The translations under genes were made by a program, and so were the position numbers. The notes under the pieces were generated by a model that saw only the letters and a list, made by a program, of their open reading frames with translations, ran no database searches and had not been told where the DNA came from. This document shows positions 10,432 through 29,315 of a DNA stretch of 64,000 nt, piece by piece; the first letter of the stretch is position 1; every line of letters begins with the position of its first letter. The stretch covers positions 124,001-188,000 of IMG/VR virus record IMGVR_UViG_3300046804_003469, one strand, 5' to 3'.

Positions 10432-10437
10432 TAAATA
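10430..10437 (+). promoter_or_regulatory. T4-type late promoter (AATAAATA)
   Basis: NATAAATA in the intergenic gap, about 27 nt before the ATG at 10465. Confidence 0.7.
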
Positions 10438-10464
10438 TTTCATAATTAGGTTTTTCTAAAAAAG

Positions 10465-12105: not shown

Positions 12106-12124
12106 TAATTATCAGTTCACATTT

Positions 12125-12132
12125 AATAAATA
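12125..12132 (+). promoter_or_regulatory. Late promoter (AATAAATA)
   Basis: Intergenic, before gp8. Confidence 0.7.
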
Positions 12133-12147
12133 AATAAAAAACCCAAA

Positions 12148-13701
12148 ATGTCTGCAATTATAACTGATCAATTAAGAATTTTGAATGCGAGTAACTTTGT
12201 CGCTGCTGCAACTTCATCGTACAATTCATATTATACATTTGTTGGTTTACCAAATGCTTCAGATTATCAATCTGATTGGAATGTAAACCCACCAGCACCA
12301 AAGGATAGTTTTGATCAAGAAAATGATTATTGGGATACTATAGTTGGATTGAAAAAAATTAAACCAGAAGATGTTAAACAAGTTATTAGAAAAATAACTT
12401 GGACTTCTGGAACTGTTTATGATATGTATAGACATGATATTACGAGAACTAATACATCAAAACCTTCAAATTCTACAAATCTTTATTCTGCCAATTATTA
12501 TGTAATGAATAAAGATTATAGGGTTTATATTTGCCTCTATAATGGAATAACACCAGAAAATCCTTCAGGAAAACCATCAATTGATGAACCAACATTTGTT
12601 GATTTAGAACCAAGAGCAGCAGGAACTAGTGGTGATGGATATATTTGGAAATATCTTTATACAATCAATCCTTCAGATATTGTAAAATTTGATTCTGTTA
12701 ATTTTATGCCAGTTCCATCAGACTGGTATACAAATATTCAAAATACTCCAATTATAGACAATGCAAAATATAGTGGTCAGATAAAGATAGTTACTATAAA
12801 AAATCGTGGAGTTGGACTTGGAACTGCTGGAGTAACTTATACTGGTGTTCCAATCAGTGGAGATGGATCTGGAGGGCAGGCAACTATCGTTATAAACAAT
12901 GATTCAAAAGTTCAATCTATTACAGTTACGAATGGTGGTTCTGGATATACTTATGGAACTGTAGATTTGATTGCTGGCAACGTTCCAACTGGCACAGTAA
13001 CACCGACTTTTGATGTAATTATTCCACCCAAAGGTGGTCATGGCGCAAACATTTATAGAGAACTTGGAGCATTTAATGTTTTAGTATTTTCTAGAATTGA
13101 AAATGATATACAAAATCCAGATTTTATTACTGGTAATCAAGTTTCAAGAATAGGTATTGTTCAAAATCCACAAGCATATAATTCTACAAATCTTTTGACT
13201 TCCGAAAAAGCAAGTAATTTATATGCAATCAAATTTAGTCAGACTAACTTCGATACAACTACATTTACATCAGATTCCTTTATTACTCAAACAGTTTCTA
13301 CTGGTGTTACTGCTGTTGGAAGAGTGGCTTCATATGATCAGAATACTGGGGTTTTGAAATATTGGCAAGATAGAACCCTTGTAGGATTTAATTCAGATGG
13401 AACACAAAATCCATCTTCATCATATGGATTAAAAATGGTTAGATTTACAAATAGTGTTGGGGTAGGTGGTTCTACAACCATAATTGGTGGATCAAGAAAT
13501 TTAAATATTGACACTACTTTTAGTGGTATTAGTACGGTAATAAATAACAATACATATTATCTTGGTCAATCTTTTACAAATGGTTTATCTAATCCAGAAG
13601 TACAAAAATATTCTGGAAATATAATTTATATTGATAATAGACCATCTGTTCTAAGATCAGTAAATCAAAAAGAAGATATTAAAGTTATTTTGCAATTCTA
13701 A
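12148..13701 (+). CDS. gp8: Baseplate wedge subunit gp8
   Basis: MSAIITDQLRILNA N-terminus, YRVYICLYN, DGYIWKYLYTI, C-terminal YIDNRP...QKEDIKVILQF. Confidence 0.92.
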   Translation: MSAIITDQLRILNASNFVAAATSSYNSYYTFVGLPNASDYQSDWNVNPPAPKDSFDQENDYWDTIVGLKKIKPEDVKQVIRKITWTSGTVYDMYRHDITRTNTSKPSNSTNLYSANYYVMNKDYRVYICLYNGITPENPSGKPSIDEPTFVDLEPRAAGTSGDGYIWKYLYTINPSDIVKFDSVNFMPVPSDWYTNIQNTPIIDNAKYSGQIKIVTIKNRGVGLGTAGVTYTGVPISGDGSGGQATIVINNDSKVQSITVTNGGSGYTYGTVDLIAGNVPTGTVTPTFDVIIPPKGGHGANIYRELGAFNVLVFSRIENDIQNPDFITGNQVSRIGIVQNPQAYNSTNLLTSEKASNLYAIKFSQTNFDTTTFTSDSFITQTVSTGVTAVGRVASYDQNTGVLKYWQDRTLVGFNSDGTQNPSSSYGLKMVRFTNSVGVGGSTTIIGGSRNLNIDTTFSGISTVINNNTYYLGQSFTNGLSNPEVQKYSGNIIYIDNRPSVLRSVNQKEDIKVILQF

Positions 13702-13707
13702 AGAATT

Positions 13708-16700
13708 ATGCCACAACATACAGATCTCAACGTTTCTCCTTATTTTGATGATTTTGATCCAAAAAAGAACTATCACAAAGTTCTGTTTAAACCTGGATAT
13801 CCAGTACAAGCTAGAGAATTAACTACTCTACAATCAATTTTTCAAAATCAAATTGAATCTTTTGGAAAAAATATCTTCAAAGAAGGATCTGTTGTAATTC
13901 CAGGTCAAACAAAATATGATGCTTCGGTTTTTGCAGTTCAAGTTGAATCTGAATATAATGGAGTTCCTATTTCATTATATCTCAACGGACTGGTTGGAAA
14001 AAGACTTAAAGGATCTATAAGTGGTGTTTCTGCTGAAGTTGTTTATGTTTTATCAAAATCAGATTCTGATAGGAATAAAGATACCATTTATTTGAGATTT
14101 TATGAAAGTGGTGGTGCTGATTTAAAAAATAAAGTTTTTTCGAATGGTGAGACATTAACTCTTTTGAGTGCATTTAAATATAACGGCATATCTTTTAATA
14201 AAGGACAGGGAATTTGCAATACTATCGCAAATGATGCGATGCAAAAAGGTTCTTTGTTTAGTGTAACTGATGGGGTATATTTTGTACGTGGATTTTTTGT
14301 AAACGTAGTAGCACAAACAATAATTTTAGATCAATATTCATCAAAACCAAATTACAAAGTAGGTTTTAATGTCATTGAATCGGTTGTAACTGCTGATGAA
14401 GATCAAAGTTTATATGATAATGCTCAAGGATTTTCAAACTATGCTGCTCCTGGAGCAGATAGATTTAAGATAGAACTAGAACTGTCTAAAAAACCATTAA
14501 CAGATACTGATACTCAAAATTTTGTAGAGATTTTTAGAGTTACTGACGGAAAAACCCAATCTTATCAAAAAAATCCTCAATATGCATTGATACGTGATGA
14601 AATGGCCAGAAGAGTGTATGATCAATCTGGTGACTTTTTTGTTAGACCTTTTTCATTATTTGTTCGTGATTGTTTAAATGATAGAGTATTAAGTAATGGA
14701 TTATATTATGAAAATCAATTAACTATGAGTAATAATAAACCATCTGAAGATAAGATGATTTATGAAATAGGTTCTGGTAAAGCCTATGTTAATGGATATG
14801 ATGTTGAAACTTTATCTGCAAAGATGATAGATGTTCCCAAAACAAGAACAACTAAAACACTTAAGAATCAACAAGTAACATTTAATGCTGGTTTATTGGC
14901 ATATGTAAATAATGTTTATGGTTCTCCAACTATTGGACTTGGTAACGGTGTTGTAGTTAGTCTTATGGATAGTAGGGTTGGAACTAATCCTACTGTTTCT
15001 ACTGGTTCTACAATTGGTATTGCTAGAGTTTATGATTATATTCCAGAAGCTGGATATTTTAATGATTCTAGCAGAATTTTAATGCGACTGTATGATATTC
15101 AAACATATACTAAAATACAGTTAACAACACCAATTACTTTACAATCTCCAGCATACATTGAAGGAGTTAGAAGTAACGCTAGTGGTTTCTTAGTTTCAAG
15201 TGTTTCCTCATCTGCAAATTTAACACTTTATGAAACTAATGGAGCATTTTTAGTTAATGAACCTATAAGAATTAATGGTATTGATAATGGACGTTTAATA
15301 TATTCAGTTACTGACTATCGTATTGGAGATATTAAATCTTTATATTCAAATACTGGAGTAAGTAATGGATTTACTGCAGATTTGGTATTAAATTCTAAAA
15401 AATTAATCGCAACTCCTGGAACTAATTTTCAGATAACCGCAAGATCAAGTGCCACTTCAAATGGAATTAGCACGGTTACAGCAGGTCTTGGCACAGATTT
15501 TATTAACACGATAAGAGCAGGAGATATTATTACTTATAGCGGTTTATCAACTACTGGTGATCCAATATACAATAAAGTTGTTTCTATTAGTGCTGGTGGA
15601 AACTCATTCACAATCGCTCCAGTTGCCACAGTTTTAGGAGTTTGTGATGGTGCTCTTCCATCAACAAACACTACAGTATCTAACATTAATAGACTTAGTA
15701 CAAATATACAAAATAAAAATTCATCATTATTAACTCCAATTAAAAATGAAAATATATCTTCAATTAATATTGAAGATAATGAATTATCTCAAAGAAGATT
15801 TTATGGATCAGTTCCTCTTTCTGGAGATTCTTTAACTGTTACTATTTCGGATCCTGATATTTATTTTGATGCTTTTTCTGCAGATAGATTTTTCATTACT
15901 TATGATACTGGAAAAATAGAATATTTGACTTTTGACAAATATTCTTTGGATACTTCAGGAAAACAACTTCAATTCATTGGATTAACAAATACAAACGGGG
16001 CAAGTTATGCTGATGTAATTACTACCGTTAAAAATTTAAAACCAAATTCAAAAATCAAAAAATTAAATAGAGCATCAAGTATTGTTATTGATGGTTCTAT
16101 TAATCAAGCTTCTGGAATTGGAGCAACTACACTAAATGATGGACTTACTTATACAAATATCTATGGTTTAAGAATTCAAGATGAACAAATTAGTTTAAAT
16201 GTTCCAGATGTAATTAATGTTCTTGCAATTTATGAGTCTACAAGTGTAGCAGAACCATCTCTTCCTAAAATAGTTTGCACTGGATTTACTGGATCACAAA
16301 ATTCAGCAAAAGATTTTGTGGTTGGAGAACACATTAATGGTGAAAGTTCTGGATCTGTAGGTCTCATAACAAAAATAATTGATGCTTCTACAATAGAATT
16401 CATATATTTAAATAATACACAATTTGTAGAGAATGAGGTTGTTTCTGGAACAGATTCAAAAACTAAAGGAATTGTTATTTCCAAACTACTTGGTGATAAA
16501 AACATCACTCAAAACTTTACTCTCGAACATGGTTATACTGATACTTATTATGATTTTTCTAGAATAATAAGAAAAGAAGGTGTTGCATCTCCTTCAAGAA
16601 AAATAAAAGTAATATTCCAGAATTATACTATTGATTCTACAGATACTGGCGAATTTATGTCAGTAAACAGTTATCCAGCATCTACATTCAAACATGATAT

Positions 16701-19700
16701 CCCATATGTCGAAAATGATCGTAGAAGATTAACAGATTATATTGACATAAGACCAAGAGTAGCTCCATATACTCCATCACAATATTCTCCTTTCGAATTC
16801 CAATCAAGAAATTTTGGTGCTGCTGGTCAATACTCCACATATACAATTGCTCCAGGAGAAAACATTATTCTTGGATATTCATACTATCTCCCAAGAATTG
16901 ATAGAGTTTATTTAACTCCATCAGGAAATTTTGAAATTAGTAGAGGAGTTCCAGCGGATAATCCAAAAGTTCCAGAAATAAAGGCAAATTGTTTAGATAT
17001 TGCTACTATACATATTCCCCCATATGTTTTTAACACCAAGAGTGTTGTTGTGGATATGGCGGAACATAAAAGATATACTATGAAAGATATTTCTGAACTG
17101 GAAAATAGAATTGAGAGAGTTGAAAGATTTACTACTCTAACAAGTTTAGAAAATAAAACTGAAAACTTCAAAATTAAAGACGCAGAAACGGGATTAGATC
17201 GTTTTAAATGTGGATTTTTTGTAGACAATTTTAGTACTACTACATATCAAGAAACTAATAATCCTCTGTTTAGATCTTGTATTGATACTGTATCTTCAAC
17301 ATTAAGACCTCCTCATCGCAGTACAAAATTAGATCTTCAATTAGGATCGGAAGCAATTTCAGGAATTGGTTCTACATATTTACCAAACTTAGATCATTCA
17401 CATGTTACTGATTTAGGATCTCCTGGAGTAAGAAAAACTGGAGATTTAATTACTTTAAATTATACCGAAAAAACATATTATGAACAACTTGTAGCAACAA
17501 GAAGTGAATATATTACTCCATTTTTGGTTAGGTTCTGGCAAGGATCTATACAACTGTTTCCTCCAGCAGATACTTGGCATGATGAATTATCAATTACAGT
17601 TCCAATTACAGTAACAAATACAACACAGGGAGTAGCACCTCCAGTAAAAAATGTTACAGTAACAAATAATGTAACTGTTGGAACTCCAGTAAATACTAAA
17701 TTACCAGTAGGTCAAACAGGTACTCAACCATTCGATTGGATTGCTAATGCAAGATCTGTTTTAAATACAATTGGTAAGCAAAAAGCATGGGGAGGTTCAA
17801 CACAAGGCGGTCTTCTTCAAGAAACTTGGAGAGGTGAGGTAACAAAAGTTACAGATAATAATATTCATTTAGTTTTTACAAATAGGTTCTTTAATACAAC
17901 TGGCGAATCAATTATTAGAAAAATACTTCCTCCAGATGTAGCCGATCAATATATTAATAAAATTAAATCTGGTGCAAAAGATCTTTCAACCACAGTTATT
18001 GATTTTGCTCCCCCAAAACAAACAACAACAACTACACAATCAACAAACGTTTCAACTACATTCACTCCACAACCTCCACAAATAACAGAAACAGTCACCC
18101 AATCAGTTTCGCATTACACACAACCAATTCGTTTCTTAAGAAGTAGAAACATTGAATTTGATGCCAAATCTTTAAGACCTGTTACAAGATTTTATCCATT
18201 TTTCCAAGGAATTGATGTAAGTAAGTATATTGTTCCAAAACTTTTAGAAATCAAAATGATTTCAGGAAAGTTTCAAGTTGGAGAAAAAGTTGTAAGTGAT
18301 GCTCATTTCTTAACAAATAGAGTAGCATTTAGATTGTGTACTCCAAATCATAAATTTGGACCTTTTAATAATCCAACTCAAAAATATAATTATCTCCCAT
18401 ACACACAACAAACTTTCCCAACAACCTATTCAGAATCATCTACTTTTTTAAATGTAGATACTTTATCAATGCAACTTCAATCAGAAACTCAATATTATGG
18501 TTCAGTTGCAATTGGAATGAGATTGATTGGACAATCATCAAAAGCGGTTGCAGAAATTACAAATATTCGTTTAGTTTCTGACAGTAATGGAAGATTAATT
18601 GGATCTTTATTTGTTCCAGATCCTTCAACAGTTGGAAACCCCAAGTGGATTAACGGTGAAAATACATTCACAGTAAGTGATTTACCAACACTACAACCAC
18701 CTGTTCCAGCACCAAATGAAATCATTGCAAACACTGTAGGATCACAAAGTTCTGCTAGTGCTGATTTCCATTCTGAGGCATGGTCTAATGTTACTGAAAC
18801 TGACATAATCACTACTAGAAATGTAGTGATTATTCCTCCACAAAAAGTTGTTACTACAACAATTACTAATACTACAACTTATGGAACAGGAACTAATGCT
18901 ACTACTAAATTTAGCGCGTCATCATTTGACCCACTTGCAGAGTCTTTCATTGTTAATGAACAAAACGGAATATTTTTAACTTCTGTCGATATTTTCTTTG
19001 AAACTAAAGATGAATCAGTACCAGTAACTTTACAAATCAGACCTATGGATGCTGGTGTTCCAAGTAATACTATCATTCCTTTCTCTGAAGTTACTTTAAA
19101 TCCTGATTTAGTCGGATTATCAACAAATGGTTCCAAATCTACTAGATTTACTTTCCCATCACCAGTTTATTTGAGCGGATCAACTCAACAGTCCATAAGA
19201 CAAGCACCAGTTGCAAATGCTCAACCAAAAGAATATTCTGTAGTTTTACTCTCGGCAAGTCCAAATTATCGTGTGTTTGTTTCTAGATTAGGTGAAAAAG
19301 ATCTTTTAACTGGAGTAACTTTAAACGCACAACCAAGTTTAGGATCTTTATTTAAGTCACAAGAAGGTTCTACTTGGACTCCATCACAATTAGAAGATTT
19401 GAAGTTTAGATTAAATAAAGCAAGTTTTGTGAAAGAAGGATTAGTAAGATTCTTCAATCCAGTTCTTTCATATAAGAATAAAAAAGTTGCAGTTACTGGA
19501 TCTAATCATTCATTATGTTTATCGAAAACTATTGTAGTTGGTCTTGGATCTACAGGTATTGATCCTAATGTTGGATTAGGTGTATCAATTATGCAAGATT
19601 CTGCTACTGCTAATTTGGTAGGACTTGCTGGAAGTGTTACTGATTTGTCAGTGGTTAATGCTGGAACTGGATATACTAATGGAACATTTAATAATATCTC

Positions 19701-21417
19701 ATTAATTACAGAAACTGGTTATGGAAAAGGAGCAACAGCAAATATTGTAGTTGCATCAAATAAAGTAACAAGTGCAACTGTTGTAAATAGTGGAACTGGA
19801 TATGAGGTAGGAGATTCATTAAAACTCCCAAGAATTGGTAATAATATTGGATTTGGAGGACAATTAGTAGTCACTTCGATAGGATCAACTAATACATTTG
19901 TACTTGGAAATGTACAAGGTCAATTTAAAGTGGGAATTTCTACATTATTCTATACAGATTATCTTGGTATTACGACTTATGTTGGTGCTGGAGTAAGCAT
20001 AACGAGCATCTTTGAAGATCAATTTGAAGATGGATTGCATATGAAGATTACTCATCCAAATCATGGAATGCACTCTCCATCCAATTTAGTTCAAATTACT
20101 GATTTTAGACCAAATGTTGAAGATAATTTTGCAAAAACAACAGCAAATATTACATCTTCAGAACAAACAACAATTCAAGTTGATTCTACTGCTGGTTTTG
20201 AAACATTTGAGGGTCTTCCAGTAAGCGCATCTAATCCAGGTTATGTTATAATTGGACATGAAGTTATAAAATATACTTCATATTCTTCAACTACTTTGAC
20301 AAATTTAACGAGAGCAATTGATGGAACTGTATCTCATCCATATAATTCTGGAGTTCCAGTTTATAAGTATGAATTTAATGGTGTTTCTCTCAGAAGAATT
20401 AATAAAATTCACGATCTTGGAGAAGTTTCTAATCCATTAGTTCATCCTACTACCCTTGATGATTATTACATCAAAGTAAGTATGGCCGCAACTGATTTCC
20501 AAGGAAATCAAATTGGAAAAGATAGAAGAAATGGTCTTTATTTCACAGAAACATCTCAATCTGGATGTCCTGGAGCTGAAATATCAAGTAATTTCCAGTT
20601 TGAAGCAATCACTCCTACAATTAGAAAAGTTTTACCTCCTGGAACAGTTATAGAACCTAAGATTAGAACAACATCAGCGACAAGTATTGGAGGTAATGAA
20701 ATTTCTTTCGTTGATAAGGGATTTGAAGATATTAAACTGGATCAAATTAATACATTTAAAGATCCAAGAATGGTTTGCTCAAAAGTTAATGAAGATCGCT
20801 ATATGACAGCAAATCCTGGAAATAGATCTTTCTCCATGCAGTTCTATATGACTACAAATAGTTCAGATTTATCTCCAGTAATTGATACTGCATTTACTTC
20901 TGTTCTATTAACAACAAATAGAATTAATGATCCTATTGGAATTCAAACTGCATTATCTTATTCAGAATCTACATTAATTAGATCATTAAATTCAGATCCA
21001 CATGATGCTATTTACATTTCTAAGATAATTAAATTAGATGTTCCAGCAAATTCATTAAAGGTTCTCTTAACTGCAAAGAGAAATACTACAAATGACATTA
21101 GAGTTATGTATAGATTATTCAGAAATGATTCTGCAGCATTGTCTTCAAGTTATCAACTGTTCCCTGGTTATTCTAACTATAAAACTGATGGTTTTGGAAT
21201 TAGAAGAGTAATTGATCCTTCTTTAAATGATGGTTCTGAAGATTTTTATTCGCAACCTTCAGGGGCTATGGAATTTAGAGATTATGAATATACTGCAGAT
21301 AATTTACCCGAATTTAATGCATTCAGTATTAAAATTGTTATGGCAGGAACTAACCAAGCGCAACCACCAGTATTTGCAGATTTAAGAGCAATCGCAACAG
21401 TAAGACCGCAAACATAA
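13708..21417 (+). CDS. Large VrlC-like (DUF4815-type) virion structural protein
   Basis: MPQHTDLNVSPYFDDFD...VLFKPGYPVQARELTTLQS, APGADRFK, GFFVDNF, DPLAESF...FLTSVDIFF. Follows gp8, as in cyanomyoviruses. Confidence 0.85.
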   Translation: MPQHTDLNVSPYFDDFDPKKNYHKVLFKPGYPVQARELTTLQSIFQNQIESFGKNIFKEGSVVIPGQTKYDASVFAVQVESEYNGVPISLYLNGLVGKRLKGSISGVSAEVVYVLSKSDSDRNKDTIYLRFYESGGADLKNKVFSNGETLTLLSAFKYNGISFNKGQGICNTIANDAMQKGSLFSVTDGVYFVRGFFVNVVAQTIILDQYSSKPNYKVGFNVIESVVTADEDQSLYDNAQGFSNYAAPGADRFKIELELSKKPLTDTDTQNFVEIFRVTDGKTQSYQKNPQYALIRDEMARRVYDQSGDFFVRPFSLFVRDCLNDRVLSNGLYYENQLTMSNNKPSEDKMIYEIGSGKAYVNGYDVETLSAKMIDVPKTRTTKTLKNQQVTFNAGLLAYVNNVYGSPTIGLGNGVVVSLMDSRVGTNPTVSTGSTIGIARVYDYIPEAGYFNDSSRILMRLYDIQTYTKIQLTTPITLQSPAYIEGVRSNASGFLVSSVSSSANLTLYETNGAFLVNEPIRINGIDNGRLIYSVTDYRIGDIKSLYSNTGVSNGFTADLVLNSKKLIATPGTNFQITARSSATSNGISTVTAGLGTDFINTIRAGDIITYSGLSTTGDPIYNKVVSISAGGNSFTIAPVATVLGVCDGALPSTNTTVSNINRLSTNIQNKNSSLLTPIKNENISSINIEDNELSQRRFYGSVPLSGDSLTVTISDPDIYFDAFSADRFFITYDTGKIEYLTFDKYSLDTSGKQLQFIGLTNTNGASYADVITTVKNLKPNSKIKKLNRASSIVIDGSINQASGIGATTLNDGLTYTNIYGLRIQDEQISLNVPDVINVLAIYESTSVAEPSLPKIVCTGFTGSQNSAKDFVVGEHINGESSGSVGLITKIIDASTIEFIYLNNTQFVENEVVSGTDSKTKGIVISKLLGDKNITQNFTLEHGYTDTYYDFSRIIRKEGVASPSRKIKVIFQNYTIDSTDTGEFMSVNSYPASTFKHDIPYVENDRRRLTDYIDIRPRVAPYTPSQYSPFEFQSRNFGAAGQYSTYTIAPGENIILGYSYYLPRIDRVYLTPSGNFEISRGVPADNPKVPEIKANCLDIATIHIPPYVFNTKSVVVDMAEHKRYTMKDISELENRIERVERFTTLTSLENKTENFKIKDAETGLDRFKCGFFVDNFSTTTYQETNNPLFRSCIDTVSSTLRPPHRSTKLDLQLGSEAISGIGSTYLPNLDHSHVTDLGSPGVRKTGDLITLNYTEKTYYEQLVATRSEYITPFLVRFWQGSIQLFPPADTWHDELSITVPITVTNTTQGVAPPVKNVTVTNNVTVGTPVNTKLPVGQTGTQPFDWIANARSVLNTIGKQKAWGGSTQGGLLQETWRGEVTKVTDNNIHLVFTNRFFNTTGESIIRKILPPDVADQYINKIKSGAKDLSTTVIDFAPPKQTTTTTQSTNVSTTFTPQPPQITETVTQSVSHYTQPIRFLRSRNIEFDAKSLRPVTRFYPFFQGIDVSKYIVPKLLEIKMISGKFQVGEKVVSDAHFLTNRVAFRLCTPNHKFGPFNNPTQKYNYLPYTQQTFPTTYSESSTFLNVDTLSMQLQSETQYYGSVAIGMRLIGQSSKAVAEITNIRLVSDSNGRLIGSLFVPDPSTVGNPKWINGENTFTVSDLPTLQPPVPAPNEIIANTVGSQSSASADFHSEAWSNVTETDIITTRNVVIIPPQKVVTTTITNTTTYGTGTNATTKFSASSFDPLAESFIVNEQNGIFLTSVDIFFETKDESVPVTLQIRPMDAGVPSNTIIPFSEVTLNPDLVGLSTNGSKSTRFTFPSPVYLSGSTQQSIRQAPVANAQPKEYSVVLLSASPNYRVFVSRLGEKDLLTGVTLNAQPSLGSLFKSQEGSTWTPSQLEDLKFRLNKASFVKEGLVRFFNPVLSYKNKKVAVTGSNHSLCLSKTIVVGLGSTGIDPNVGLGVSIMQDSATANLVGLAGSVTDLSVVNAGTGYTNGTFNNISLITETGYGKGATANIVVASNKVTSATVVNSGTGYEVGDSLKLPRIGNNIGFGGQLVVTSIGSTNTFVLGNVQGQFKVGISTLFYTDYLGITTYVGAGVSITSIFEDQFEDGLHMKITHPNHGMHSPSNLVQITDFRPNVEDNFAKTTANITSSEQTTIQVDSTAGFETFEGLPVSASNPGYVIIGHEVIKYTSYSSTTLTNLTRAIDGTVSHPYNSGVPVYKYEFNGVSLRRINKIHDLGEVSNPLVHPTTLDDYYIKVSMAATDFQGNQIGKDRRNGLYFTETSQSGCPGAEISSNFQFEAITPTIRKVLPPGTVIEPKIRTTSATSIGGNEISFVDKGFEDIKLDQINTFKDPRMVCSKVNEDRYMTANPGNRSFSMQFYMTTNSSDLSPVIDTAFTSVLLTTNRINDPIGIQTALSYSESTLIRSLNSDPHDAIYISKIIKLDVPANSLKVLLTAKRNTTNDIRVMYRLFRNDSAALSSSYQLFPGYSNYKTDGFGIRRVIDPSLNDGSEDFYSQPSGAMEFRDYEYTADNLPEFNAFSIKIVMAGTNQAQPPVFADLRAIATVRPQT

Positions 21418-21420
21418 TTT

Positions 21421-21648
21421 ATGGAATACATAAAAGTAAAAGATAAAGATCATTTAGTTCGTGATAGTTATTCAAACGCAATTATTAATACTGACATTGA
21501 AGGTTACAATTCCTATATGGAAACTTATAGAATTAAATATAATGAAAAAAAGAGAATTGAAAACTTAGAAAATGATGTAAACTCAATCAAAAGTGATTTG
21601 AATGAAATTAAAGATTTGTTGAGAGGATTATCTAATGGATCCAAATAA
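21421..21648 (+). CDS. Small coiled-coil hypothetical protein
   Basis: LVRDSYSNAIINTD...LENDVNSIKSDLNEIKDLL. Directly follows the VrlC-like gene. Confidence 0.8.
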   Translation: MEYIKVKDKDHLVRDSYSNAIINTDIEGYNSYMETYRIKYNEKKRIENLENDVNSIKSDLNEIKDLLRGLSNGSK

Positions 21649-21799
21649 AATTACTTTAGAAAACATCAATAAATTGTTTGAATATGAAAAACTTTGTCGA
21701 GACATAGATAGTATAGATGATATTGATGTTGTAAAAGATTTTGCAAAATCTTATATTAAACTTTATTTCAAACAACAAGAAGTCATATCGAATTTCTAA
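21635..21799 (+). CDS. 54-aa NblA-like protein (not in the ORF track)
   Basis: Hand translation: MDPNKITLENINKLFEYEKLCRDIDSIDDIDVVKDFAKSYIKLYFKQQEVISNF. SD-like GAGAGGA upstream; TAATG overlap with gp13 start. The ORF looks solid, the NblA call is by-eye similarity. Confidence 0.6.
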   Translation: MDPNKITLENINKLFEYEKLCRDIDSIDDIDVVKDFAKSYIKLYFKQQEVISNF

Positions 21800-22644
21800 T
21801 GGCACAACCATCTACTAGACAAGAATTAATCGACTATTGTAAAAGAAAACTGGGACATCCAGTTTTAGAGATTAACGTTGCTGATGAACAAATTGATGAT
21901 TTGGTAGATGATGCTATTCAATTCTTTCAAGAAAGACATTTTGATGGTGTGTATCAAACATACATGAAATATAAAATTACTCAAGATGATATTAATAGAG
22001 GAAGATCTAGAGCTCATGGCGTAACTCCAGTTGGAATTACAACCACTACAGTATATGAAAATCTTGGAAATTCTACTTCATTTTCTTTTGAAGAAAATGG
22101 AAACTACTTACCAGTTCCTCCATCAGTAATTGGAGTTGAAAGAATATTTCATTTTGATGGTTCAAACACCATAACACATAATATGTTTAGTGTTAAATAT
22201 CAATTATTTTTAAATGATATTTACTATTGGGGTTCAACGGAACTGTTAACTTATGCCATGGTTAAAACATATCTTGAAGATATTGACTTTTTATTGACAA
22301 CTCAGAAACAAATTAGATTTAATAAGAGACAAGATAGACTTTATCTTGATATTGATTGGGGAAGTGTTACTCCAGATACTTATCTAATTATTGATTGTTA
22401 TAGAACACTCGATCCAAATGATTACGGAAGAGTATGGAATGATTCGTTCTTAAAATTATATCTCACATCGCTAATTAAACGTCAGTGGGGTCAGAATTTA
22501 ATTAAATTCCAAGGTGTAAAACTTCCAGGTGGAGTAGAATTAAATGGAAGGCAATTATATGATGATGCTCAAAGAGAAATTGATGTACTTATGGAAAAAA
22601 TGTCCAATACTTACGAACTCCCACCATTAGACATGATTGGATAA
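21799..22644 (+). CDS. gp13: Neck protein gp13
   Basis: RQELIDYCKRKLGHPVLEINV...KRQWGQNLIKFQGVKLPGGVELNG. Confidence 0.95.
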   Translation: MAQPSTRQELIDYCKRKLGHPVLEINVADEQIDDLVDDAIQFFQERHFDGVYQTYMKYKITQDDINRGRSRAHGVTPVGITTTTVYENLGNSTSFSFEENGNYLPVPPSVIGVERIFHFDGSNTITHNMFSVKYQLFLNDIYYWGSTELLTYAMVKTYLEDIDFLLTTQKQIRFNKRQDRLYLDIDWGSVTPDTYLIIDCYRTLDPNDYGRVWNDSFLKLYLTSLIKRQWGQNLIKFQGVKLPGGVELNGRQLYDDAQREIDVLMEKMSNTYELPPLDMIG

Positions 22645-22645
22645 T

Positions 22646-24079
22646 ATGCTTAATCCATTTTTCCTCCAAGGGTCAAAATCAGAACAATCTTTAGTTCAAG
22701 ATTTAATTAATGAACAACTCCGCATGTATGGAGTTGAAATTTATTATTTGCCAAGAAAGTATGTTACTAAAAATACTGTAATTAGAGAAGTAATTGAATC
22801 TAAATTTGATAATGCATATCCATTGGAAGCATATGTTGATACGTATGATGGATATGAGGGACAGGGAACTATTCTTTCAAAATTTGGCATTCAACCATTA
22901 ACAGACTTAACTGTTATTATTTCTAAAGAAAGATTTGAAACTTATATTACACCATTAATAAAAAATTTACCGAATGTAGAACTAGCAACCAGACCAAAAG
23001 AGGGAGATTTAATTTATTTTCCTCTTGGTCACAGATTATTTGAAATTAAATTTGTTGAGCACGAAAAACCTTTTTATCAACTTCAAAAAACTTATGTCTA
23101 TGAATTGAGATGTGAACTCTTTAGACTTGAAGATGAAATTATAGATACTGGAGTTGCTGATGTAGATAATACTGTGAATGGTGGAGTTGATAATTTAGGC
23201 AATACATCAATTAATGATGAAGATAGTAATACTTATATTCAAGGGCATACCCAAACTTTACAATTAGTTGGATCTGGTGTAACTGCAACTGCAATCACTA
23301 GTGTATTAAATCATGGTGTAAGATATATTGATATTTTAAATAGAGGAAATGGATATACTTCCACACCAACTATAAAAATATCATCAGCACCTTTGGGTGG
23401 ATCTACAGCAGTTGGAATTGCCTCTATGATTGATGGTCTTATTGATTGTGATGGTATAATTTCACCAAAAATACAAGCAATTCAAATTATAAATCCTGGT
23501 TATGGTTATGATGTAACACCTTCTATAATGGCAATTGGTGGAGGTGGATCTGGATTTATTGCTACATGCGTTCTTGGAGATGGAATAGTTGGAATTATTA
23601 CAGTCACAAATGGTGGATCTGGATATGTTAATAATCCTACAGTAACTATTAGTAGTCCATCTTCTGGTGAAACTGCAACCGCAACTGCTCACATTAATAC
23701 AGTTGGAATTGTTACTATGATAACTTTATCAAATACTGGATATGGTTACACTAGCGTTCCAACTATAACAATACAATCTCCAAATGTAACTGGAATTGGA
23801 ACATACGTTCCTAATGAAACTATAGTTGGAAGTATATCTCAAACTACAGCACTGGTAAGATCCTGGAATTCACTCACTAATGAGTTAATAATTTCAAATA
23901 TTTCTGGTTCATTTAAACCTGGGGAAGTTATAACAGGTTCAGAATCTGGTGCGTTTTATAATTTGAAAAAATATGTTCTTGATAATTCGATAGATAAATA
24001 TAATCAAAATTTAGAAATACAAACTGAATCTAATTCAATTATTGACTTTTCTGAATCCAACCCTTTTGGGATGCCATAA
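22646..24079 (+). CDS. gp14: Neck/head-closure protein gp14 with C-terminal beta-repeat extension
   Basis: MLNPFF...EQSLVQDLINEQLRMYGVEIYYLPR, RPKEGDLIYFP, ending DFSESNPFG. ATG 22646 preferred over TTG 22637. Confidence 0.93.
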   Translation: MLNPFFLQGSKSEQSLVQDLINEQLRMYGVEIYYLPRKYVTKNTVIREVIESKFDNAYPLEAYVDTYDGYEGQGTILSKFGIQPLTDLTVIISKERFETYITPLIKNLPNVELATRPKEGDLIYFPLGHRLFEIKFVEHEKPFYQLQKTYVYELRCELFRLEDEIIDTGVADVDNTVNGGVDNLGNTSINDEDSNTYIQGHTQTLQLVGSGVTATAITSVLNHGVRYIDILNRGNGYTSTPTIKISSAPLGGSTAVGIASMIDGLIDCDGIISPKIQAIQIINPGYGYDVTPSIMAIGGGGSGFIATCVLGDGIVGIITVTNGGSGYVNNPTVTISSPSSGETATATAHINTVGIVTMITLSNTGYGYTSVPTITIQSPNVTGIGTYVPNETIVGSISQTTALVRSWNSLTNELIISNISGSFKPGEVITGSESGAFYNLKKYVLDNSIDKYNQNLEIQTESNSIIDFSESNPFGMP

Positions 24080-24082
24080 ATA
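24075..24082 (+). promoter_or_regulatory. Late promoter (CATAAATA)
   Basis: Overlaps the gp14 stop, upstream of gp15. Confidence 0.65.
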
Positions 24083-24119
24083 GTCAATTAATTGTTATTT
24101 TTAACAAAGGGTTAACAAC

Positions 24120-25121
24120 ATGTTTGAATATTTTTATCACGAAATACTAAGAAGAACCATAATTGGTTTTGGTTCTTTATTTAATGGTATTTCAATTAAA
24201 CATGTTAATGAATCAAAAGATGTAACCAATGTTATACAAGTTCCTCTTGCATACGGACCTACTCAAAAATTTCTCGCAAGATTAGAGCAAGTACCAAATT
24301 TAAATAAACCAGTTCAAATCACATTACCAAGAATGTCATTTGAATTTGTTGGTTTAACCTACGATCCTACAAGAAAAGTAACTACAACTCAAACATTTTT
24401 ATCTGTCGATAAAAATGGAAGTAGTGTAAGAAAAACTTTTATGCCAGTTCCATACAATATGGAATTTGAACTTTCTATTTTTACAATTTTAAATGATGAT
24501 ATGCTTCAAATCATCGAACAAATTTTACCTTATTTTCAACCTGCATATACATTGACAGTTGATTTAGTAGATAAAATTGGAGAAAAAAGAGATATTCCAA
24601 TCGTAATAGATTCTATTACGATGCAAGATAATTATGAAGGAAATTTTGATACTAGAAGAGCGTTAATTTATACCATTAGATTTACTGCTAAAACTTATCT
24701 TTTTGGACCTACTTCTTCTTCGGATGTATCCAAAGATATTATTCAAAGAGTTTCTATTGGTTATGTTACTGGAGAACAGGGAAGTGGTGCAACCAGAGAT
24801 CTCACATATAGTGTTGAACCAAGAGCATTACAAAGTTATTCAAATAATACAGTTACTTCCTTGGCATCAGATATTGATCAATCTTCCACTTTATTAACAG
24901 TAAATGATACTTCATCTTTAGCAATAAACAAGTATATTACTATAGATAATGAAGAACTTTATATTACTTCTATCCCAAGTTCAACTACAATTATTGTAAA
25001 TAGAGGTGCTGATGGAACCACTGCATCTTCTCACGTATCTGGAACTGAAATTAAGTTAATTACTCAATCTGATAATTCTTTAATACCATTTGGCGACGAT
25101 TTTGGATTTGATGGATTATGA
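24120..25121 (+). CDS. gp15: Tail terminator/sheath stabiliser gp15 with extra C-terminal domain
   Basis: YFYHEILRRTIIGFGSLFN, VPLAYGPTQKFLARL, LPRMSFE, QIIEQILPYFQP. Confidence 0.95.
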   Translation: MFEYFYHEILRRTIIGFGSLFNGISIKHVNESKDVTNVIQVPLAYGPTQKFLARLEQVPNLNKPVQITLPRMSFEFVGLTYDPTRKVTTTQTFLSVDKNGSSVRKTFMPVPYNMEFELSIFTILNDDMLQIIEQILPYFQPAYTLTVDLVDKIGEKRDIPIVIDSITMQDNYEGNFDTRRALIYTIRFTAKTYLFGPTSSSDVSKDIIQRVSIGYVTGEQGSGATRDLTYSVEPRALQSYSNNTVTSLASDIDQSSTLLTVNDTSSLAINKYITIDNEELYITSIPSSTTIIVNRGADGTTASSHVSGTEIKLITQSDNSLIPFGDDFGFDGL

Positions 25122-25567
25122 AAATGACTAAAAAATTTGATAACCTAAATCAAACTTTTAATGTTTCTGGAGACATTGTTTCGAAAGAAGTGGAAGAAAT
25201 ACAACCAATTGAAGATAAAATTGAAAAAATATCTTCAATTTCAGATGATATTAAAAAAGATTATGAATATACGAGAGGAAACTTATATTCTATCATTGAA
25301 AAAGGTCAGGAAGCAATTAATGGTATATTAGAACTTGCCCAAGAAAGTGAAATGCCTCGTGCATATGAGGTTGCTGGACAATTAATTAAGAGTGTTTCTG
25401 ATGCAACTGATAAGTTAATGGATCTTCAGAAAAAACTAAAAGATATTGATGAAGTTAAACATAAAGGCCCTACAAATGTTACAAATGCACTTTTTGTTGG
25501 ATCAACTGCAGAACTTCAAAAATTGTTAAAACAACAACAATTTAATGGAGAAGTTCCAAACAAATAA
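25118..25567 (+). CDS. gp16: Terminase small subunit gp16
   Basis: DYEYTRGNLY, PRAYEVAGQLIK, NALFVGSTAELQK. Confidence 0.95.
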   Translation: MKMTKKFDNLNQTFNVSGDIVSKEVEEIQPIEDKIEKISSISDDIKKDYEYTRGNLYSIIEKGQEAINGILELAQESEMPRAYEVAGQLIKSVSDATDKLMDLQKKLKDIDEVKHKGPTNVTNALFVGSTAELQKLLKQQQFNGEVPNK

Positions 25568-25570
25568 ATA
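25563..25570 (+). promoter_or_regulatory. Late promoter (AATAAATA)
   Basis: At the gp16 stop, upstream of the 582-aa ORF. Confidence 0.65.
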
Positions 25571-25596
25571 ATAAATGAGAATGACTCTTTTTTTAA

Positions 25597-27345
25597 ATGC
25601 ATGAAGTAAAGGCGCACAAAACAATTGAGCAAATTGCAAAAAAACATCGTCTTGATGTGTCTTTTGTGAGTAAGCAGTTAGAAATGGGCATCCCTATTGA
25701 ACATGAGCATACTAAAGACAAAGATCTTGCCACTGATATTGCCCTACAGCATCTTGATGAAATTCCAGACTACTACACTAGATTAAAGAAAATGGAAGCA
25801 TCTGCCAAAAAAGAACATAAAAAGTTCAAAGATGTAAAGGAAGATGCAGATTCAGGTGTTGATGATATGGATTCGCCAATTCATCCAGTTCATGCAATTC
25901 ATGTAGATCATGAAAAAAGATACTGTCCGAAATGCAAAAGAGTTGAATTGAGAAGTCAATGTAAATATGGACCAAAATGTTGGGACATGTTTTCATCTCC
26001 AGCCAAATTAAAAGAGGAAAAATCTATGCAAGACGAAAAAAGATATTGCCCTCTATGCGATAAAAGAGAAACGAGATCTGAATGTTCTTATGGTGGCAAG
26101 GCATGGGATAAAGTATCTGTAAAAGATCATGAGTACTCTATGGCACGTTCTGAACTTTCTACTATTGCAGATGCAGTTAAAAGATTGAATATGAAGGTTG
26201 GAAAAGGTGAAGGTAACTTAGAAGCATGGGTTCAATCAAAAATTACTAAAGCAGCAGATTACATTGATACTGTGGCAGATTATATTGCAAGTGGTGAAAT
26301 GGAAGAAGCATTAAGTTTTGAACTTGGTCCAAAATTCAAAACCGCACAAAAGATAGCAAAAGCATCTGAAATTTCTAAAAAAGGATCTACTGAAGGAGAA
26401 AGAACTGCAGGTAAAAAAGCAGTTCAAAGATTGGGTGGAACTGCAGCAGAACTGCCTAAGATTAAAGAGGAAAATTTAGTTAATAAAATTTTAGGAGAGT
26501 TGGAAGAGGATAAAAAGAAGGGTTTGTGGGATAATATTCATGCTCGTAGAGAAAAAGGATTACCACGTAAAAAACCAGGACAAAAAGGATATCCAGAAAC
26601 ACTCGATATTGATGAAGACCTTGAACAAGCACGTAAAAATGTAGGTGCTAGTAAATGCTGGAAAGGTAAAGTTGCAAAGGGAACAAAAATAAAGAATGGA
26701 AAAGAAGTTCCAAACTGTGTTCCTGCAGAAAGCGTAACTATTGAAGATGCAAATGGAAATCCATATGTAGAATTTGTTGATTTAATTAAACCAGATCCAC
26801 TTGTATCTGAGACATATCGTTTACCTCCTAATAATGGAAATATACTTCTTGTAACTGTAATGTGGAGAGGAGCAACATATTCAACAAAAATGTTCTTCCC
26901 ACAAATTAATATTCCATCAAGAAAAGATGTAACTGATGAAATTCAAAAAGTATATCCAGGGGCAAAAGTTTTAGCATATCAACCATCAAATTTTCAACCT
27001 GGACAAGCACTGATTGTTACCGATAGAAGATCAAAAAATTATCTTATCACAAACAAAACAATTGGTGAAGAAGTAGAACTTGAAGAAGATTGGCAATCTG
27101 TAAATCGTAAAGATAAAACTGATGGATTAAGTCAAAAAGCAGTTAATGCTTATCGTCGTGAAAATCCTGGTTCCAAGTTACAAACTGCTGTAACTGAAAA
27201 AAAGCCTAAAGGGAAAAGGAAGAAAAGACGTAAGAGTTTTTGTAGTCGTATGAAAGGAATGAAATCAAAACTTACATCAGCAAAAACTGCTAGAGATCCA
27301 GATTCAAGAATTAACAAAGCACTTCGTCGTTGGAATTGTAACTAA
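25597..27345 (+). CDS. Modular 582-aa protein, probable internal head protein/polyprotein
   Basis: DUF5661-like N-module (GIPIEHEHT...IALQHLDEIPDYYTRL), two CPxC repeats, and a basic DUF6321-like C-module (SFCSRMKG...SRINKALRRWNC). Modules are separated by acidic xxEE linkers. Confidence 0.6.
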   Translation: MHEVKAHKTIEQIAKKHRLDVSFVSKQLEMGIPIEHEHTKDKDLATDIALQHLDEIPDYYTRLKKMEASAKKEHKKFKDVKEDADSGVDDMDSPIHPVHAIHVDHEKRYCPKCKRVELRSQCKYGPKCWDMFSSPAKLKEEKSMQDEKRYCPLCDKRETRSECSYGGKAWDKVSVKDHEYSMARSELSTIADAVKRLNMKVGKGEGNLEAWVQSKITKAADYIDTVADYIASGEMEEALSFELGPKFKTAQKIAKASEISKKGSTEGERTAGKKAVQRLGGTAAELPKIKEENLVNKILGELEEDKKKGLWDNIHARREKGLPRKKPGQKGYPETLDIDEDLEQARKNVGASKCWKGKVAKGTKIKNGKEVPNCVPAESVTIEDANGNPYVEFVDLIKPDPLVSETYRLPPNNGNILLVTVMWRGATYSTKMFFPQINIPSRKDVTDEIQKVYPGAKVLAYQPSNFQPGQALIVTDRRSKNYLITNKTIGEEVELEEDWQSVNRKDKTDGLSQKAVNAYRRENPGSKLQTAVTEKKPKGKRKKRRKSFCSRMKGMKSKLTSAKTARDPDSRINKALRRWNCN

Positions 27346-27361
27346 TATATAAATTTTTATT

Positions 27362-29011: not shown

Positions 29012-29235
29012 TGGATTTAGATAATCAAATAACATTAGGTCATTTATTTTTCACAAATAGGAATTGTAGGACTTGTGGGAAACAAAAAAATTTACTAGAA
29101 GATTTTTATAGAATTAGAAAAGGATCTTTAGTATCTTCATATTCTTACGAATGTAAAGAATGCACCAAGGAAAGAATTATAAAAAATAGAAAAAATAAAT
29201 TTTATCATTACAAAACAGAATATCCCGATTGGTAG
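29011..29235 (+). CDS. Small CxxC...CxxC zinc-binding protein
   Basis: CRTC...YECKEC...EYPDW. TGATG overlap with the gp17 stop. Confidence 0.7.
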   Translation: MDLDNQITLGHLFFTNRNCRTCGKQKNLLEDFYRIRKGSLVSSYSYECKECTKERIIKNRKNKFYHYKTEYPDW

Positions 29236-29274
29236 ATATTCATGCATTGTTTCCCCGATCAAAAGTTGCTTTTT

Positions 29275-29282
29275 AATAAATA
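29275..29282 (+). promoter_or_regulatory. Late promoter (AATAAATA)
   Basis: Upstream of gp18; AGGAG SD follows. Confidence 0.75.
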
Positions 29283-29315
29283 TTTTTTAGATACATAAAT
29301 CATCAGGAGAAAAAC

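What the first reader, a model, noticed from the sequence alone, without database searches (positions are those of the whole stretch)
21635..21799. Hidden NblA-like gene inside the late structural operon
Seen: a 54-aa ORF below the track cut-off, with an SD and a TAATG overlap with gp13. Its pattern L....F-E-x-E-K-x-x-R-x-I-D-x-x-D-D-x-x-x-x-K-x-x-A-K...Q fits my recollection of the helix-loop-helix NblA family, especially picocyanobacterial forms; KDF aligns with Nostoc NblA 'AKDF'. Known: NblA is the adaptor that targets phycobilisomes for Clp degradation, and some cyanophages encode it (e.g. Ma-LMM01). Inference: late co-expression with virion genes would release amino acids from the antenna when capsids are built. 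An nblA fixed in the T4-like core module would be easy to overlook.
Basis: partly seen in the sequence, partly recalled or inferred. Interest (0 to 1): 0.8.

Follow-up and report, generated by a model that had tools for sequence, protein, structure and literature searches.

The report
NblA-like gene in cyanophage neck operon
A real, conserved 54-residue gene just before neck gene gp13 of a freshwater T4-like cyanophage belongs to a small phage family already predicted in print to be NblA, the adaptor that marks the cyanobacterial light antenna for degradation, so it is a new member of a known kind with untested function.

Summary
The ORF at 21635-21799 (+) is real. It has an AGGA Shine-Dalgarno site 7 nt upstream. 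It overlaps the upstream 75-aa virion gene by 14 nt and shares TAATG with gp13. It stays open in 75/75 distinct relatives, with dN/dS about 0.19.

It belongs to phrog_27081 (E 1e-25). It is 52-59% identical to proteins of S-SCSM1, S-SCSM2R, S-TIM5/61, S-SM2, Bellamy and S-SRM01. GenBank or a 2022 paper already calls several of these NblA (HHpred 95-97%).

My tests were mixed but net positive:
- No Pfam NblA hit for the ORF or for 81 relatives.
- The family profile aligns end to end with Ma-LMM01 NblA (hhalign P 8e-4; 0/200 shuffles reach the score).
- The AlphaFold model (pLDDT 88) is a helix-loop-helix. In a scan of 48,161 PDB chains, the three NblA structures rank 1, 2 and 5.

The slot between the DUF4815 giant protein, the 75-aa gene and gp13 is kept in 79/80 viral contigs, and in four of the seven divergent members checked, down to 33% identity. 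Other members lie in non-structural regions.

Late expression and antenna degradation are inferred, not shown. Verdict: plausible viral NblA, new member of a known kind.

The parts
21635..21799 (+). nblA-like gene, 54 codons plus TAA. Predicted helix 11-25, loop 26-29, helix 30-53.
   Evidence: ORF. phrog_27081 E 1.2e-25. AF2 pLDDT 88.4. Top PDB structural neighbours are NblA. hhalign against Ma-LMM01 NblA gives P 8e-4. dN/dS 0.19.
21621..21627 (+). Shine-Dalgarno-like GAGAGGA, 7 nt before the ATG, inside the 3' end of the upstream gene.
   Evidence: Sequence. GGAG/GAGG/AGGA lies 5-20 nt upstream in 65 of 74 distinct related loci.
21421..21648 (+). 75-aa coiled-coil 'virion structural protein' gene. 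Its last 14 nt overlap the nblA-like start.
   Evidence: phrog_473 E 1e-24. Same gene and same overlap in S-SM2, S-SRM01, Bellamy and SynMITS9220M01 and in IMG/VR loci.
13708..21417 (+). 2569-aa giant structural protein (VrlC-like, DUF4815) that opens the conserved block.
   Evidence: ORF. Its C-terminal 600 aa match upstream of the small genes in 75 of the 80 IMG/VR loci. Annotated VrlC/structural protein in isolates. PF16075 in related contigs.
21799..22644 (+). gp13 neck protein (head-tail adaptor Ad2). Its ATG shares an A with the nblA-like stop (TAATG).
   Evidence: phrog_211 E 4e-48. 74% identical to S-SM2 gp13.
22637..24079 (+). gp14 neck protein.
   Evidence: Pfam T4_neck-protein E 1.7e-30. 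phrog_460.
24120..25121 (+). gp15 tail sheath stabiliser.
   Evidence: Pfam T4-gp15_tss E 2.4e-83.
13540..13546 (+). Nearest upstream ATAAATA motif (T4-type late-promoter core). It is a candidate start of the transcript that would carry the nblA-like gene.
   Evidence: 21 of 22 ATAAATA sites are on the + strand, many just upstream of gene starts, and none lies between 13546 and 23994. No terminator-like or sigma-70-like signal above chance in 10000-29500. Promoter function is inferred.

Best explanation
The ORF encodes a small helix-loop-helix protein of the cyanomyovirus NblA-like family (phrog_27081). This family is a very divergent viral relative of cyanobacterial NblA.

Proposed mechanism, by analogy with NblA, none of it tested here: the protein dimerises through its long C-terminal helix. 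It binds phycobiliproteins and/or other host proteins on one surface and the ClpC chaperone on the other. This hands them to the host Clp protease, which dismantles the light antenna and frees amino acids.

In this phage and a broad lineage of relatives, the gene sits between a 75-aa virion gene and gp13, with overlapping start and stop codons. It is therefore most likely transcribed from T4-type late promoters and translated in step with the neck genes.

Shown: the gene is real and under purifying selection, its family membership, its NblA-like predicted fold, a weak but significant profile similarity to a bona fide NblA, and conserved synteny. Inferred: dimer formation, binding partners, bleaching activity and late timing.
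For: Real gene:
- (see the observation check).

Family:
- phrog_27081 at E 1e-25.
- 52-59% identity to S-SCSM1 YP_010669930, annotated 'phycobilisome degradation protein (nblA)', to S-SCSM2R 'NblA', and to the S-TIM5/S-TIM61 proteins.
- Published HHpred for these homologues against PDB NblA gives 95-97.3% probability (PMC9602691 Tables S2 and S4).

Fold:
- The AF2 model has pLDDT 88.4, a short helix, a loop and a long helix.
- In a Foldseek-independent scan of 48,161 PDB chains, 1ojh_A NblA ranks 1 (Z 5.3, rmsd 1.7 A, 47 of 52 residues), 2q8v_A NblA ranks 2, and 3cs5_A NblA ranks 5.

Sequence:
- hhalign of the 81-member family profile against Ma-LMM01 NblA scores 22.5 with P 8e-4 over 62 columns end to end.
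- 200 shuffles of that sequence give mean 9.4, sd 2.0 and maximum 17.0. The reversed sequence scores 11.2.
- Ma-LMM01 NblA is a valid positive control: Pfam NblA 1e-13, and it hits PDB 1ojh, 2q8v, 2qdo and 3cs5.

ESM Atlas:
- Nearest clusters include 'Phycobilisome degradation protein family'.
- At rank 63 there is a cluster in which 12% of members carry PF04485.

Function is not tied to the neck:
- Relatives lie next to a helicase and 2OG oxygenases (S-SCSM1), between the small- and large-terminase genes (S-SCSM2R), among tRNAs and small ORFs (S-TIM61, S-SKS1, S-B05, Sf-FS3), beside restriction-modification genes (DSL-LC03), and after gp45.
- NblA is not among the non-structural proteins that the virion proteome texts of S-SCSM1 and S-SCSM2R name. 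The full protein lists were not seen.

Relevance of a viral NblA:
- Deleting nblA in the T7-like phage S-TIP37 lengthens the latent period and reduces virion protein production (PMC12695635).
Against: - No match to Pfam NblA (PF04485) at E<=10 for the ORF, for 22 isolate and metagenome relatives, or for 81 representatives down to 30% identity.
- Family HMMs do not find PDB NblA sequences.
- hhalign against a T7-like phage NblA profile is only P 0.034. Against S-TIP37 NblA alone it is at shuffle level.
- Foldseek finds nothing in the PDB or in AFDB Swiss-Prot.
- Z 5.3 is low in absolute terms, and a two-helix hairpin is a common shape.
- Relative to canonical NblA the alignment needs a 3-residue insertion after the L-x-L-E motif. 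The protein also ends near Anabaena residue 51, so it lacks the conserved C-terminal tail.
- No member of this myovirus clade has been tested, and one marine phage NblA (G1b) failed to complement.
- No cellular member of the family was found, so a host origin is not shown here.
- No RNA data are available for this phage.
Confidence: 0.6

Rival explanations
1. It is a small assembly factor or minor component of the neck/whisker region. For example, it could be a helper for the adjacent 75-aa coiled-coil virion protein, the giant DUF4815 protein or gp13. On this reading the NblA-like hairpin is only a shared shape.
For: - Tight and very old synteny with translational coupling: 79/80 IMG/VR loci, four isolates, and divergent members at 33-49% identity.
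- Overlap with the upstream virion gene occurs in nearly all loci.
- In T4, the gene before gp13 is wac (fibritin), a coiled-coil neck fibre (established knowledge).
- Sequence evidence for NblA is weak.
Against: - Members of the same family sit in replication, terminase or hypervariable regions far from gp13 in at least ten other phages or contigs.
- The gene is absent from this slot in phage B3.
- It is absent from about 95% of cyanomyovirus records that have gp13.
- It is not mentioned among the virion proteins of S-SCSM1 or S-SCSM2R.
- The three NblA structures, rather than phage structural proteins, top the structural ranking.
Confidence: 0.13
2. It is a host-takeover hairpin protein with a target other than the phycobilisome. 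It could be an adaptor or inhibitor acting on other host proteins or on a host defence. It would share ancestry or only shape with NblA, but not the bleaching function.
For: - Viral NblA of S-TIP37 directs degradation of non-phycobilisome proteins as well, and nblA occurs in phages of phycobilisome-less Prochlorococcus.
- One marine phage NblA did not complement bleaching.
- The family is fused in either order to a domain of unknown function (phrog_3426, T4 Y07B-like) in some phages.
- There is a weak N-terminal similarity to AcrIIA15, E 0.03-0.5.
Against: - All 23 isolate records with the gene are Synechococcus phages. Synechococcus carries phycobilisomes (established knowledge). This is not statistically distinguishable from chance, given only 24 Prochlorococcus phage records.
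- The AcrIIA15 similarity is not significant.
- The best-supported relatives by fold and profile are NblA.
Confidence: 0.25
3. It is a chance ORF that does not code for protein, lying in the gap between two virion genes.
For: It is short (54 codons) in a genome of about 31% G+C, where stop-free stretches need explaining.
Against: - The frame is open in 75/75 distinct relatives, while the other frames are closed.
- dN/dS is 0.19.
- There are hundreds of protein clusters.
- The SD site is conserved.
- The AF2 model is confident.
Confidence: 0.01

Closest known systems
Cyanomyovirus and TIM5-like phage NblA-like proteins: S-SCSM1 ORF237 (YP_010669930), S-SCSM2R ORF118, the S-TIM5/S-TIM61 protein, S-SM2 SSM2_101, Bellamy gp115, SynMITS9220M01_087, S-SRM01 gp198. 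All are phrog_27081.
   Same: - Full-length alignment at 37-59% identity.
- Same length class, and the same conserved F-E-Y-E-K and K-L-Y-x-K-Q-Q-E blocks.
- In S-SM2, Bellamy, SynMITS9220M01 and S-SRM01 the slot is the same, and the overlap with the 75-aa virion gene is the same 14 nt or, in SynMITS9220M01, 11 nt.
   Different: - This copy comes from an uncultured freshwater phage with about 31% G+C.
- It abuts gp13 directly (TAATG), whereas the isolates have one or two extra genes in between.
- None of the family has been tested experimentally.
Canonical cyanobacterial NblA (Pfam PF04485; PDB 1OJH, 2Q8V/2QDO, 3CS5) and host-derived phage copies such as Ma-LMM01 NblA.
   Same: - Size of about 55-65 residues.
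- Short-helix, loop, long-helix fold. These are the best structural neighbours.
- L-x-L-E start of helix 1, and end-to-end profile alignment with Ma-LMM01 NblA.
   Different: - No Pfam hit.
- A 3-residue insertion after L-x-L-E.
- No C-terminal W-G tail.
- No cellular members found.
- Dimerisation, ClpC binding and phycobiliprotein binding are untested.
T7-like cyanophage NblA (S-TIP37, MH540083 nt 12467-12703). This is the only viral NblA with a deletion phenotype.
   Same: A small phage-encoded protein that overlaps neighbouring genes, with a proposed role in freeing host resources.
   Different: - S-TIP37 NblA passes the Pfam NblA threshold at 27.8 bits.
- The present family shows no significant similarity to it.
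- S-TIP37 nblA lies in the DNA replication/metabolism cluster after the exonuclease gene, not in a virion-gene operon.

Membership tests
NblA (Pfam PF04485) | Sequence match to the curated family model at or above its gathering score (25 bits). | tested here: not met
   No hit at E<=10 for the ORF, for 22 relatives or for 81 representatives. The controls pass: Ma-LMM01 NblA at 51.8 bits and S-TIP37 NblA at 27.8 bits.
NblA (Pfam PF04485) | Remote (profile-level) homology to bona fide NblA. | tested here: inconclusive
   Positive against Ma-LMM01 NblA: hhalign P 8e-4, and 0/200 shuffles reach the score. Weak against a T7-like NblA profile (P 0.034). Null against S-TIP37 alone. Published HHpred for orthologues is 95-97%.
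NblA (Pfam PF04485) | Helix-loop-helix monomer of about 60 residues, with a short N-terminal and a long C-terminal helix. | tested here: met
   AF2 gives helices 11-25 and 30-53 at pLDDT 88.4. NblA chains rank 1, 2 and 5 of 48,161. This rests on a predicted model, Z is at most 5.3, and the shape is common.
NblA (Pfam PF04485) | Homodimer (four-helix arrangement) as the functional unit. | not testable with these tools
   Only monomer prediction is offered. A natural tandem duplicate of the domain (P0121) hints at a two-copy unit.
NblA (Pfam PF04485) | Binds phycobiliproteins and ClpC, and causes phycobilisome degradation (bleaching). | not testable with these tools
   No experiment exists for any member of this clade.
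Cyanomyovirus NblA-like family (phrog_27081) | Full-length match to the family profile and to named members. | tested here: met
   phrog_27081 E 1.2e-25 over residues 1-53. tblastn gives 94-100% coverage of 23 phage records. Alignments A1, A3 and A4.
Cyanomyovirus NblA-like family (phrog_27081) | Slot between the 75-aa virion gene and gp13, with overlapping start, in the S-SM2/Bellamy-type lineage. | tested here: met
T4-type neck or virion structural protein | Present wherever the neck module is present, and detected in virions. | tested here: not met
   518 records carry gp13 but only 23 carry this gene. It is absent at this slot in B3 and elsewhere in the genome in other phages. It is not reported in two virion proteomes, which is weak evidence for so small a protein.

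The most novel reading that the evidence does not exclude
In a broad, old lineage of T4-like cyanophages, the NblA-like gene has been locked into the late neck operon. There it is translationally coupled to a virion gene and to gp13, and the arrangement persists while the protein diverges to 33% identity. This would make it a late-timed proteolysis adaptor, or an NblA-fold protein with a second job in morphogenesis. Either would be a mode of regulation and use different from the DNA-metabolism-cluster nblA of T7-like phages. I did not find it discussed in the papers I read.
Probability: 0.25. Interest if true: 0.5.

Novelty: new member of a known kind. Interest (0 to 1): 0.3.

Why it matters
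Viral NblA has recently been shown to speed up infection and to lower light harvesting by ocean picocyanobacteria, but only for T7-like phages (PMC12695635). T4-like cyanophages are the other major group. If their divergent NblA-like family is active, antenna degradation by phages is more widespread than the T7-like counts suggest. It would also extend to freshwater picocyanobacteria.

This window adds a freshwater member. It also shows that the gene is a stable resident of the late neck operon in a large lineage, which gives a clear, testable prediction about timing. It does not open a new class of system.

Tried and rejected
- Pfam and PDB sequence searches with the single protein and with family profiles found no NblA, only sub-threshold noise: DUF7212, AcrIIA15, Smoothelin.
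- Foldseek against the PDB and AFDB Swiss-Prot returned nothing for this 54-residue model. I treat that as uninformative, not negative.
- I looked for cellular (host) members. A scan of species-representative genomes gave 4 loci, all mis-binned phage contigs carrying gp13, gp14 or the giant protein. The first try with the wide alignment failed for lack of a conserved stretch.
- Divergent representatives that looked host-like by eye (P0180/P0271, P0238) turned out to be phage genes in the same slot. Cluster look-up gave no names.
- I tested host-range enrichment (Synechococcus versus Prochlorococcus phages): 23 versus 0 records. With only 24 Prochlorococcus records this is not significant, so I dropped it as an argument.
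- The only public runs holding this DNA are freshwater DNA metagenomes, with no RNA.
- A search for a second copy, or for a Y07B-like partner, in the window found none.
- Sigma-70 promoter and terminator scans around the gene were at chance level.

Full report
**Observation.** The window holds a long run of same-strand virion genes. A 54-codon ORF runs from ATG 21635 to TAA 21797-21799 on the + strand. GAGAGGA at 21621-21627 gives a Shine-Dalgarno site 7 nt before the start. The start overlaps the last 14 nt of a 75-aa ORF (21421-21648). The stop shares an A with the ATG of the next gene (TAATG). The neighbours are:
- a 2569-aa giant structural protein (13708-21417);
- the 75-aa protein, which matches phrog_473 'virion structural protein';
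- gp13 (phrog_211, E 4e-48);
- gp14 (Pfam T4_neck-protein, E 2e-30);
- gp15 (Pfam T4-gp15_tss, E 2e-83).

**Is it a gene?** Yes.
- It matches phrog_27081 at E 1.2e-25.
- There are 404 clusters of relatives in the 5.8-billion protein collection.
- There are 240 representatives at E<=1e-3 in an exhaustive HMMER pass over 1.84 billion proteins.
- In 80 related IMG/VR contigs the frame is intact (54-66 codons). Two apparent exceptions are an ATT in the start position and a match cut by a contig end.
- Across 75 distinct DNA versions the coding frame is always open, while the other five frames carry stops in 85-100% of them.
- Median dN/dS is 0.19 at dS about 1.
- A strong SD motif is present in 65 of 74 distinct loci, and the upstream gene ends 4-26 nt inside the ORF in nearly all.

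**What family?** tblastn against 50,697 phage records finds 23 records at 37-59% identity, all Synechococcus phages or S-TIM5-type cyanophages.
- Two are annotated as NblA: S-SCSM1 YP_010669930, 'phycobilisome degradation protein (nblA)', and S-SCSM2R 'NblA'.
- The S-SCSM1 paper (PMC9602691) reports HHpred probabilities of 95-95.5% for ORF237 against PDB NblA.
- It reports 96.4-97.3% for seven homologues: S-B43, S-B05, S-SKS1, S-SM2 YP_004322257, Bellamy YP_009791272, SynMITS9220M01 QJT70100 and S-SRM01 QPX48163. It groups them with S-TIM5 and picocyanobacterial NblA.
- The last four named by accession are the genes in the same slot as the ORF studied here.
- The same paper cites Nadel et al. 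2019 as having counted S-TIM5 among nblA-carrying isolates. The preprint itself speaks only of eleven marine cyanophages.

So the family and its NblA reading are in the literature. The gene is 'hidden' only because it is under the ORF length cut-off.

**Negative tests of the NblA claim.**
- Pfam NblA (PF04485) is not hit at E<=10 by the ORF, by 22 relatives or by 81 representatives down to 30% identity.
- Family HMMs do not retrieve NblA chains from PDB sequences.
- Foldseek returns nothing.
- The controls behave as they should. Ma-LMM01 NblA scores 51.8 bits on PF04485 and finds 1OJH, 2Q8V, 2QDO and 3CS5. The experimentally validated S-TIP37 NblA scores 27.8 bits.

**Positive tests of the NblA claim.**
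- hhalign of the 81-member profile against Ma-LMM01 NblA aligns 62 columns end to end, with score 22.5 and P 8e-4.
- 200 shuffles of that sequence give mean 9.4, sd 2.0 and maximum 17.0. The reversed sequence scores 11.2.
- A Foldseek-independent scan of 48,161 PDB representatives ranks NblA of Nostoc 7120 first (Z 5.3, rmsd 1.7 A, 47 residues). It ranks NblA of T. vulcanus second (Z 4.9) and NblA of S. elongatus fifth (Z 4.4).
- These are all three NblA clusters in that library. The absolute Z values are modest and hairpins are common, but finding all three in the top five is hard to credit to chance.
- ESM Atlas neighbours include a viral cluster named 'Phycobilisome degradation protein family'. 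At rank 63 there is a cluster in which 12% of members carry PF04485.

**Limits of the NblA claim.**
- Against T7-like phage NblA the signal is weak or absent: P 0.034 against a profile, and shuffle level against S-TIP37 alone.
- The family is therefore a distant branch, nearer to the canonical cyanobacterial type than to the T7-like type.
- The alignment needs a 3-residue insertion after the L-x-L-E motif.
- The protein ends near Anabaena residue 51, without the W-G tail.

**Context and distribution.**
- Of the 80 closest IMG/VR contigs, 79 keep neighbours from the order giant protein, 75-aa gene, nblA-like gene, gp13, gp14, gp15. In a minority, one or more extra genes sit before gp13.
- Of the seven divergent representatives looked up, four (33-49% identity) keep the same slot: P0271, P0238, P0164 and P0272. 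The residence there is therefore old.
- Other members lie elsewhere:
  - beside a helicase and 2OG oxygenases (S-SCSM1);
  - between the small- and large-terminase genes (S-SCSM2R);
  - among tRNAs and small ORFs (S-TIM61, S-SKS1, S-B05, Sf-FS3);
  - next to restriction-modification genes (DSL-LC03);
  - after gp45;
  - in runs of small ORFs.
- Phage B3 lacks it at this slot.
- Only 23 records carry it, against 518 with a gp13 match, about 460 of them cyanophages.
- No cellular genome holds a close relative. The four hits in species-representative genomes are phage contigs mis-binned into Pirellulaceae, Methanobacteriota, Crocinitomicaceae and Acetobacteraceae MAGs.
- This mobility, and the gene's absence from most phages that have the neck module, argue against an obligatory structural role.
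- The virion-proteome sections of the S-SCSM1 and S-SCSM2R papers do not list NblA among the detected non-structural proteins. This is weak evidence for a 6-kDa protein.

**Expression.**
- No RNA data exist. The DNA is found only in two runs of one freshwater metagenome sample.
- ATAAATA, the core of the T4-type late promoter (established knowledge for T4-like phages), occurs 22 times. Of these, 21 are on the + strand, many just upstream of gene starts: 10431, 12126, 24076, 25564, 29276, 32170, 35826 and 37061.
- None lies between 13546 and 23994.
- Sigma-70-like sites and terminators are at chance level around the gene.
- The gene is therefore probably read from late transcripts that start upstream of the giant gene, and translated by coupling. 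This is inference.
- It contrasts with S-TIP37, where nblA belongs to the DNA replication/metabolism cluster.

**Mechanism.**
- Most likely, the protein is a viral NblA-type adaptor that delivers phycobiliproteins, and perhaps other host proteins, to ClpC-ClpP. This would free amino acids when virion proteins are made. I put this at about 0.6 overall, and lower for the specific bleaching activity.
- In S-TIP37, loss of nblA lengthens the latent period from 3 h to 8-10 h and cuts production of morphogenesis proteins.
- The rivals are an NblA-shaped host-takeover protein with another target (0.25), a neck-assembly helper (0.13) and a chance ORF (0.01).

**Verdict.** The NblA reading is supported by fold, by one significant profile comparison and by published HHpred results on orthologues. 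It fails the curated Pfam test and has no experimental backing. The claim of an overlooked core-module gene is only partly right: the gene is lineage-specific and was already described. It is a new (freshwater) member of a known kind. The conserved late-operon position is the one aspect that may deserve a follow-up.

Noticed in passing
window 54221-55282 (+): A 353-aa protein in the replication module matches Pfam DruA (Druantia defence protein A) at 39.6 bits, E 4.5e-10, above the 27-bit cut-off. It lies between the gp44 clamp-loader gene (52530-53474), an unassigned 184-aa ORF (53667-54221) and regA (55799-56239). A Druantia-type domain in a cyanophage replication block is unexpected.
   Followed up: no
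P0121; P0140, P0143, P0157; L008:2264-2677 (S-SKS1 SWZG_00226): Natural fusions of the family exist. P0121 is a tandem duplicate of two NblA-like domains in one 134-aa protein. In the others, the domain is fused in either order to a roughly 65-aa domain of unknown function (phrog_3426, which the ESM Atlas names T4 Y07B-like, PF27001). The window itself has no such partner.
   Followed up: partly
window, whole; e.g. 10431, 12126, 24076, 25564, 29276, 32170, 35826, 37061: ATAAATA occurs on the + strand in 21 of 22 cases, and many sites lie just upstream of gene starts. It is rarer overall than in shuffles (22 versus 39 expected). This looks like a set of T4-type late promoters, with the motif avoided elsewhere.
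   Followed up: partly
L175-L178 (JBILTA010000815.1, NZRR01000014.1, JBIPMW010000332.1, JBIPLY010000592.1): Contigs filed in GTDB species genomes as Pirellulaceae, Methanobacteriota, Crocinitomicaceae and Acetobacteraceae MAGs carry cyanophage gp13, gp14, gp15, the 75-aa gene and the giant protein. They are mis-binned phage fragments, three of them from one lake series.
   Followed up: yes
window 21647-21709 (residues 5-25 of the ORF): The N-terminal stretch KITLENINKLFEYEKLCRDID resembles residues 42-62 of the anti-CRISPR AcrIIA15 (PDB 8jfo, 8jfr). E is only 0.03-0.5, so it is probably chance.
   Followed up: partly
L094:968-1204 (S-TIP37, MH540083 nt 12467-12703): The experimentally studied nblA of S-TIP37 is not annotated in its GenBank record. 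It overlaps the exonuclease gene and had to be located from the coordinates given in the paper.
   Followed up: yes
window, whole: The source is an uncultured freshwater phage. The DNA is held by two runs of one freshwater metagenome sample, and the longest contig carrying the protein is 215 kb. G+C is unusually low at 28-34%. The closest isolates reach only about 74% protein identity in gp13. Typical cyanomyovirus genes are present: a CobS-like AAA ATPase, Hsp20, denV and regA.
   Followed up: partly
window 25-10431 and 13708-21417 (+): Two giant ORFs (3468 and 2569 aa) occupy 18 kb of the structural operon. The second is VrlC/DUF4815-like. The first was not examined.
   Followed up: no
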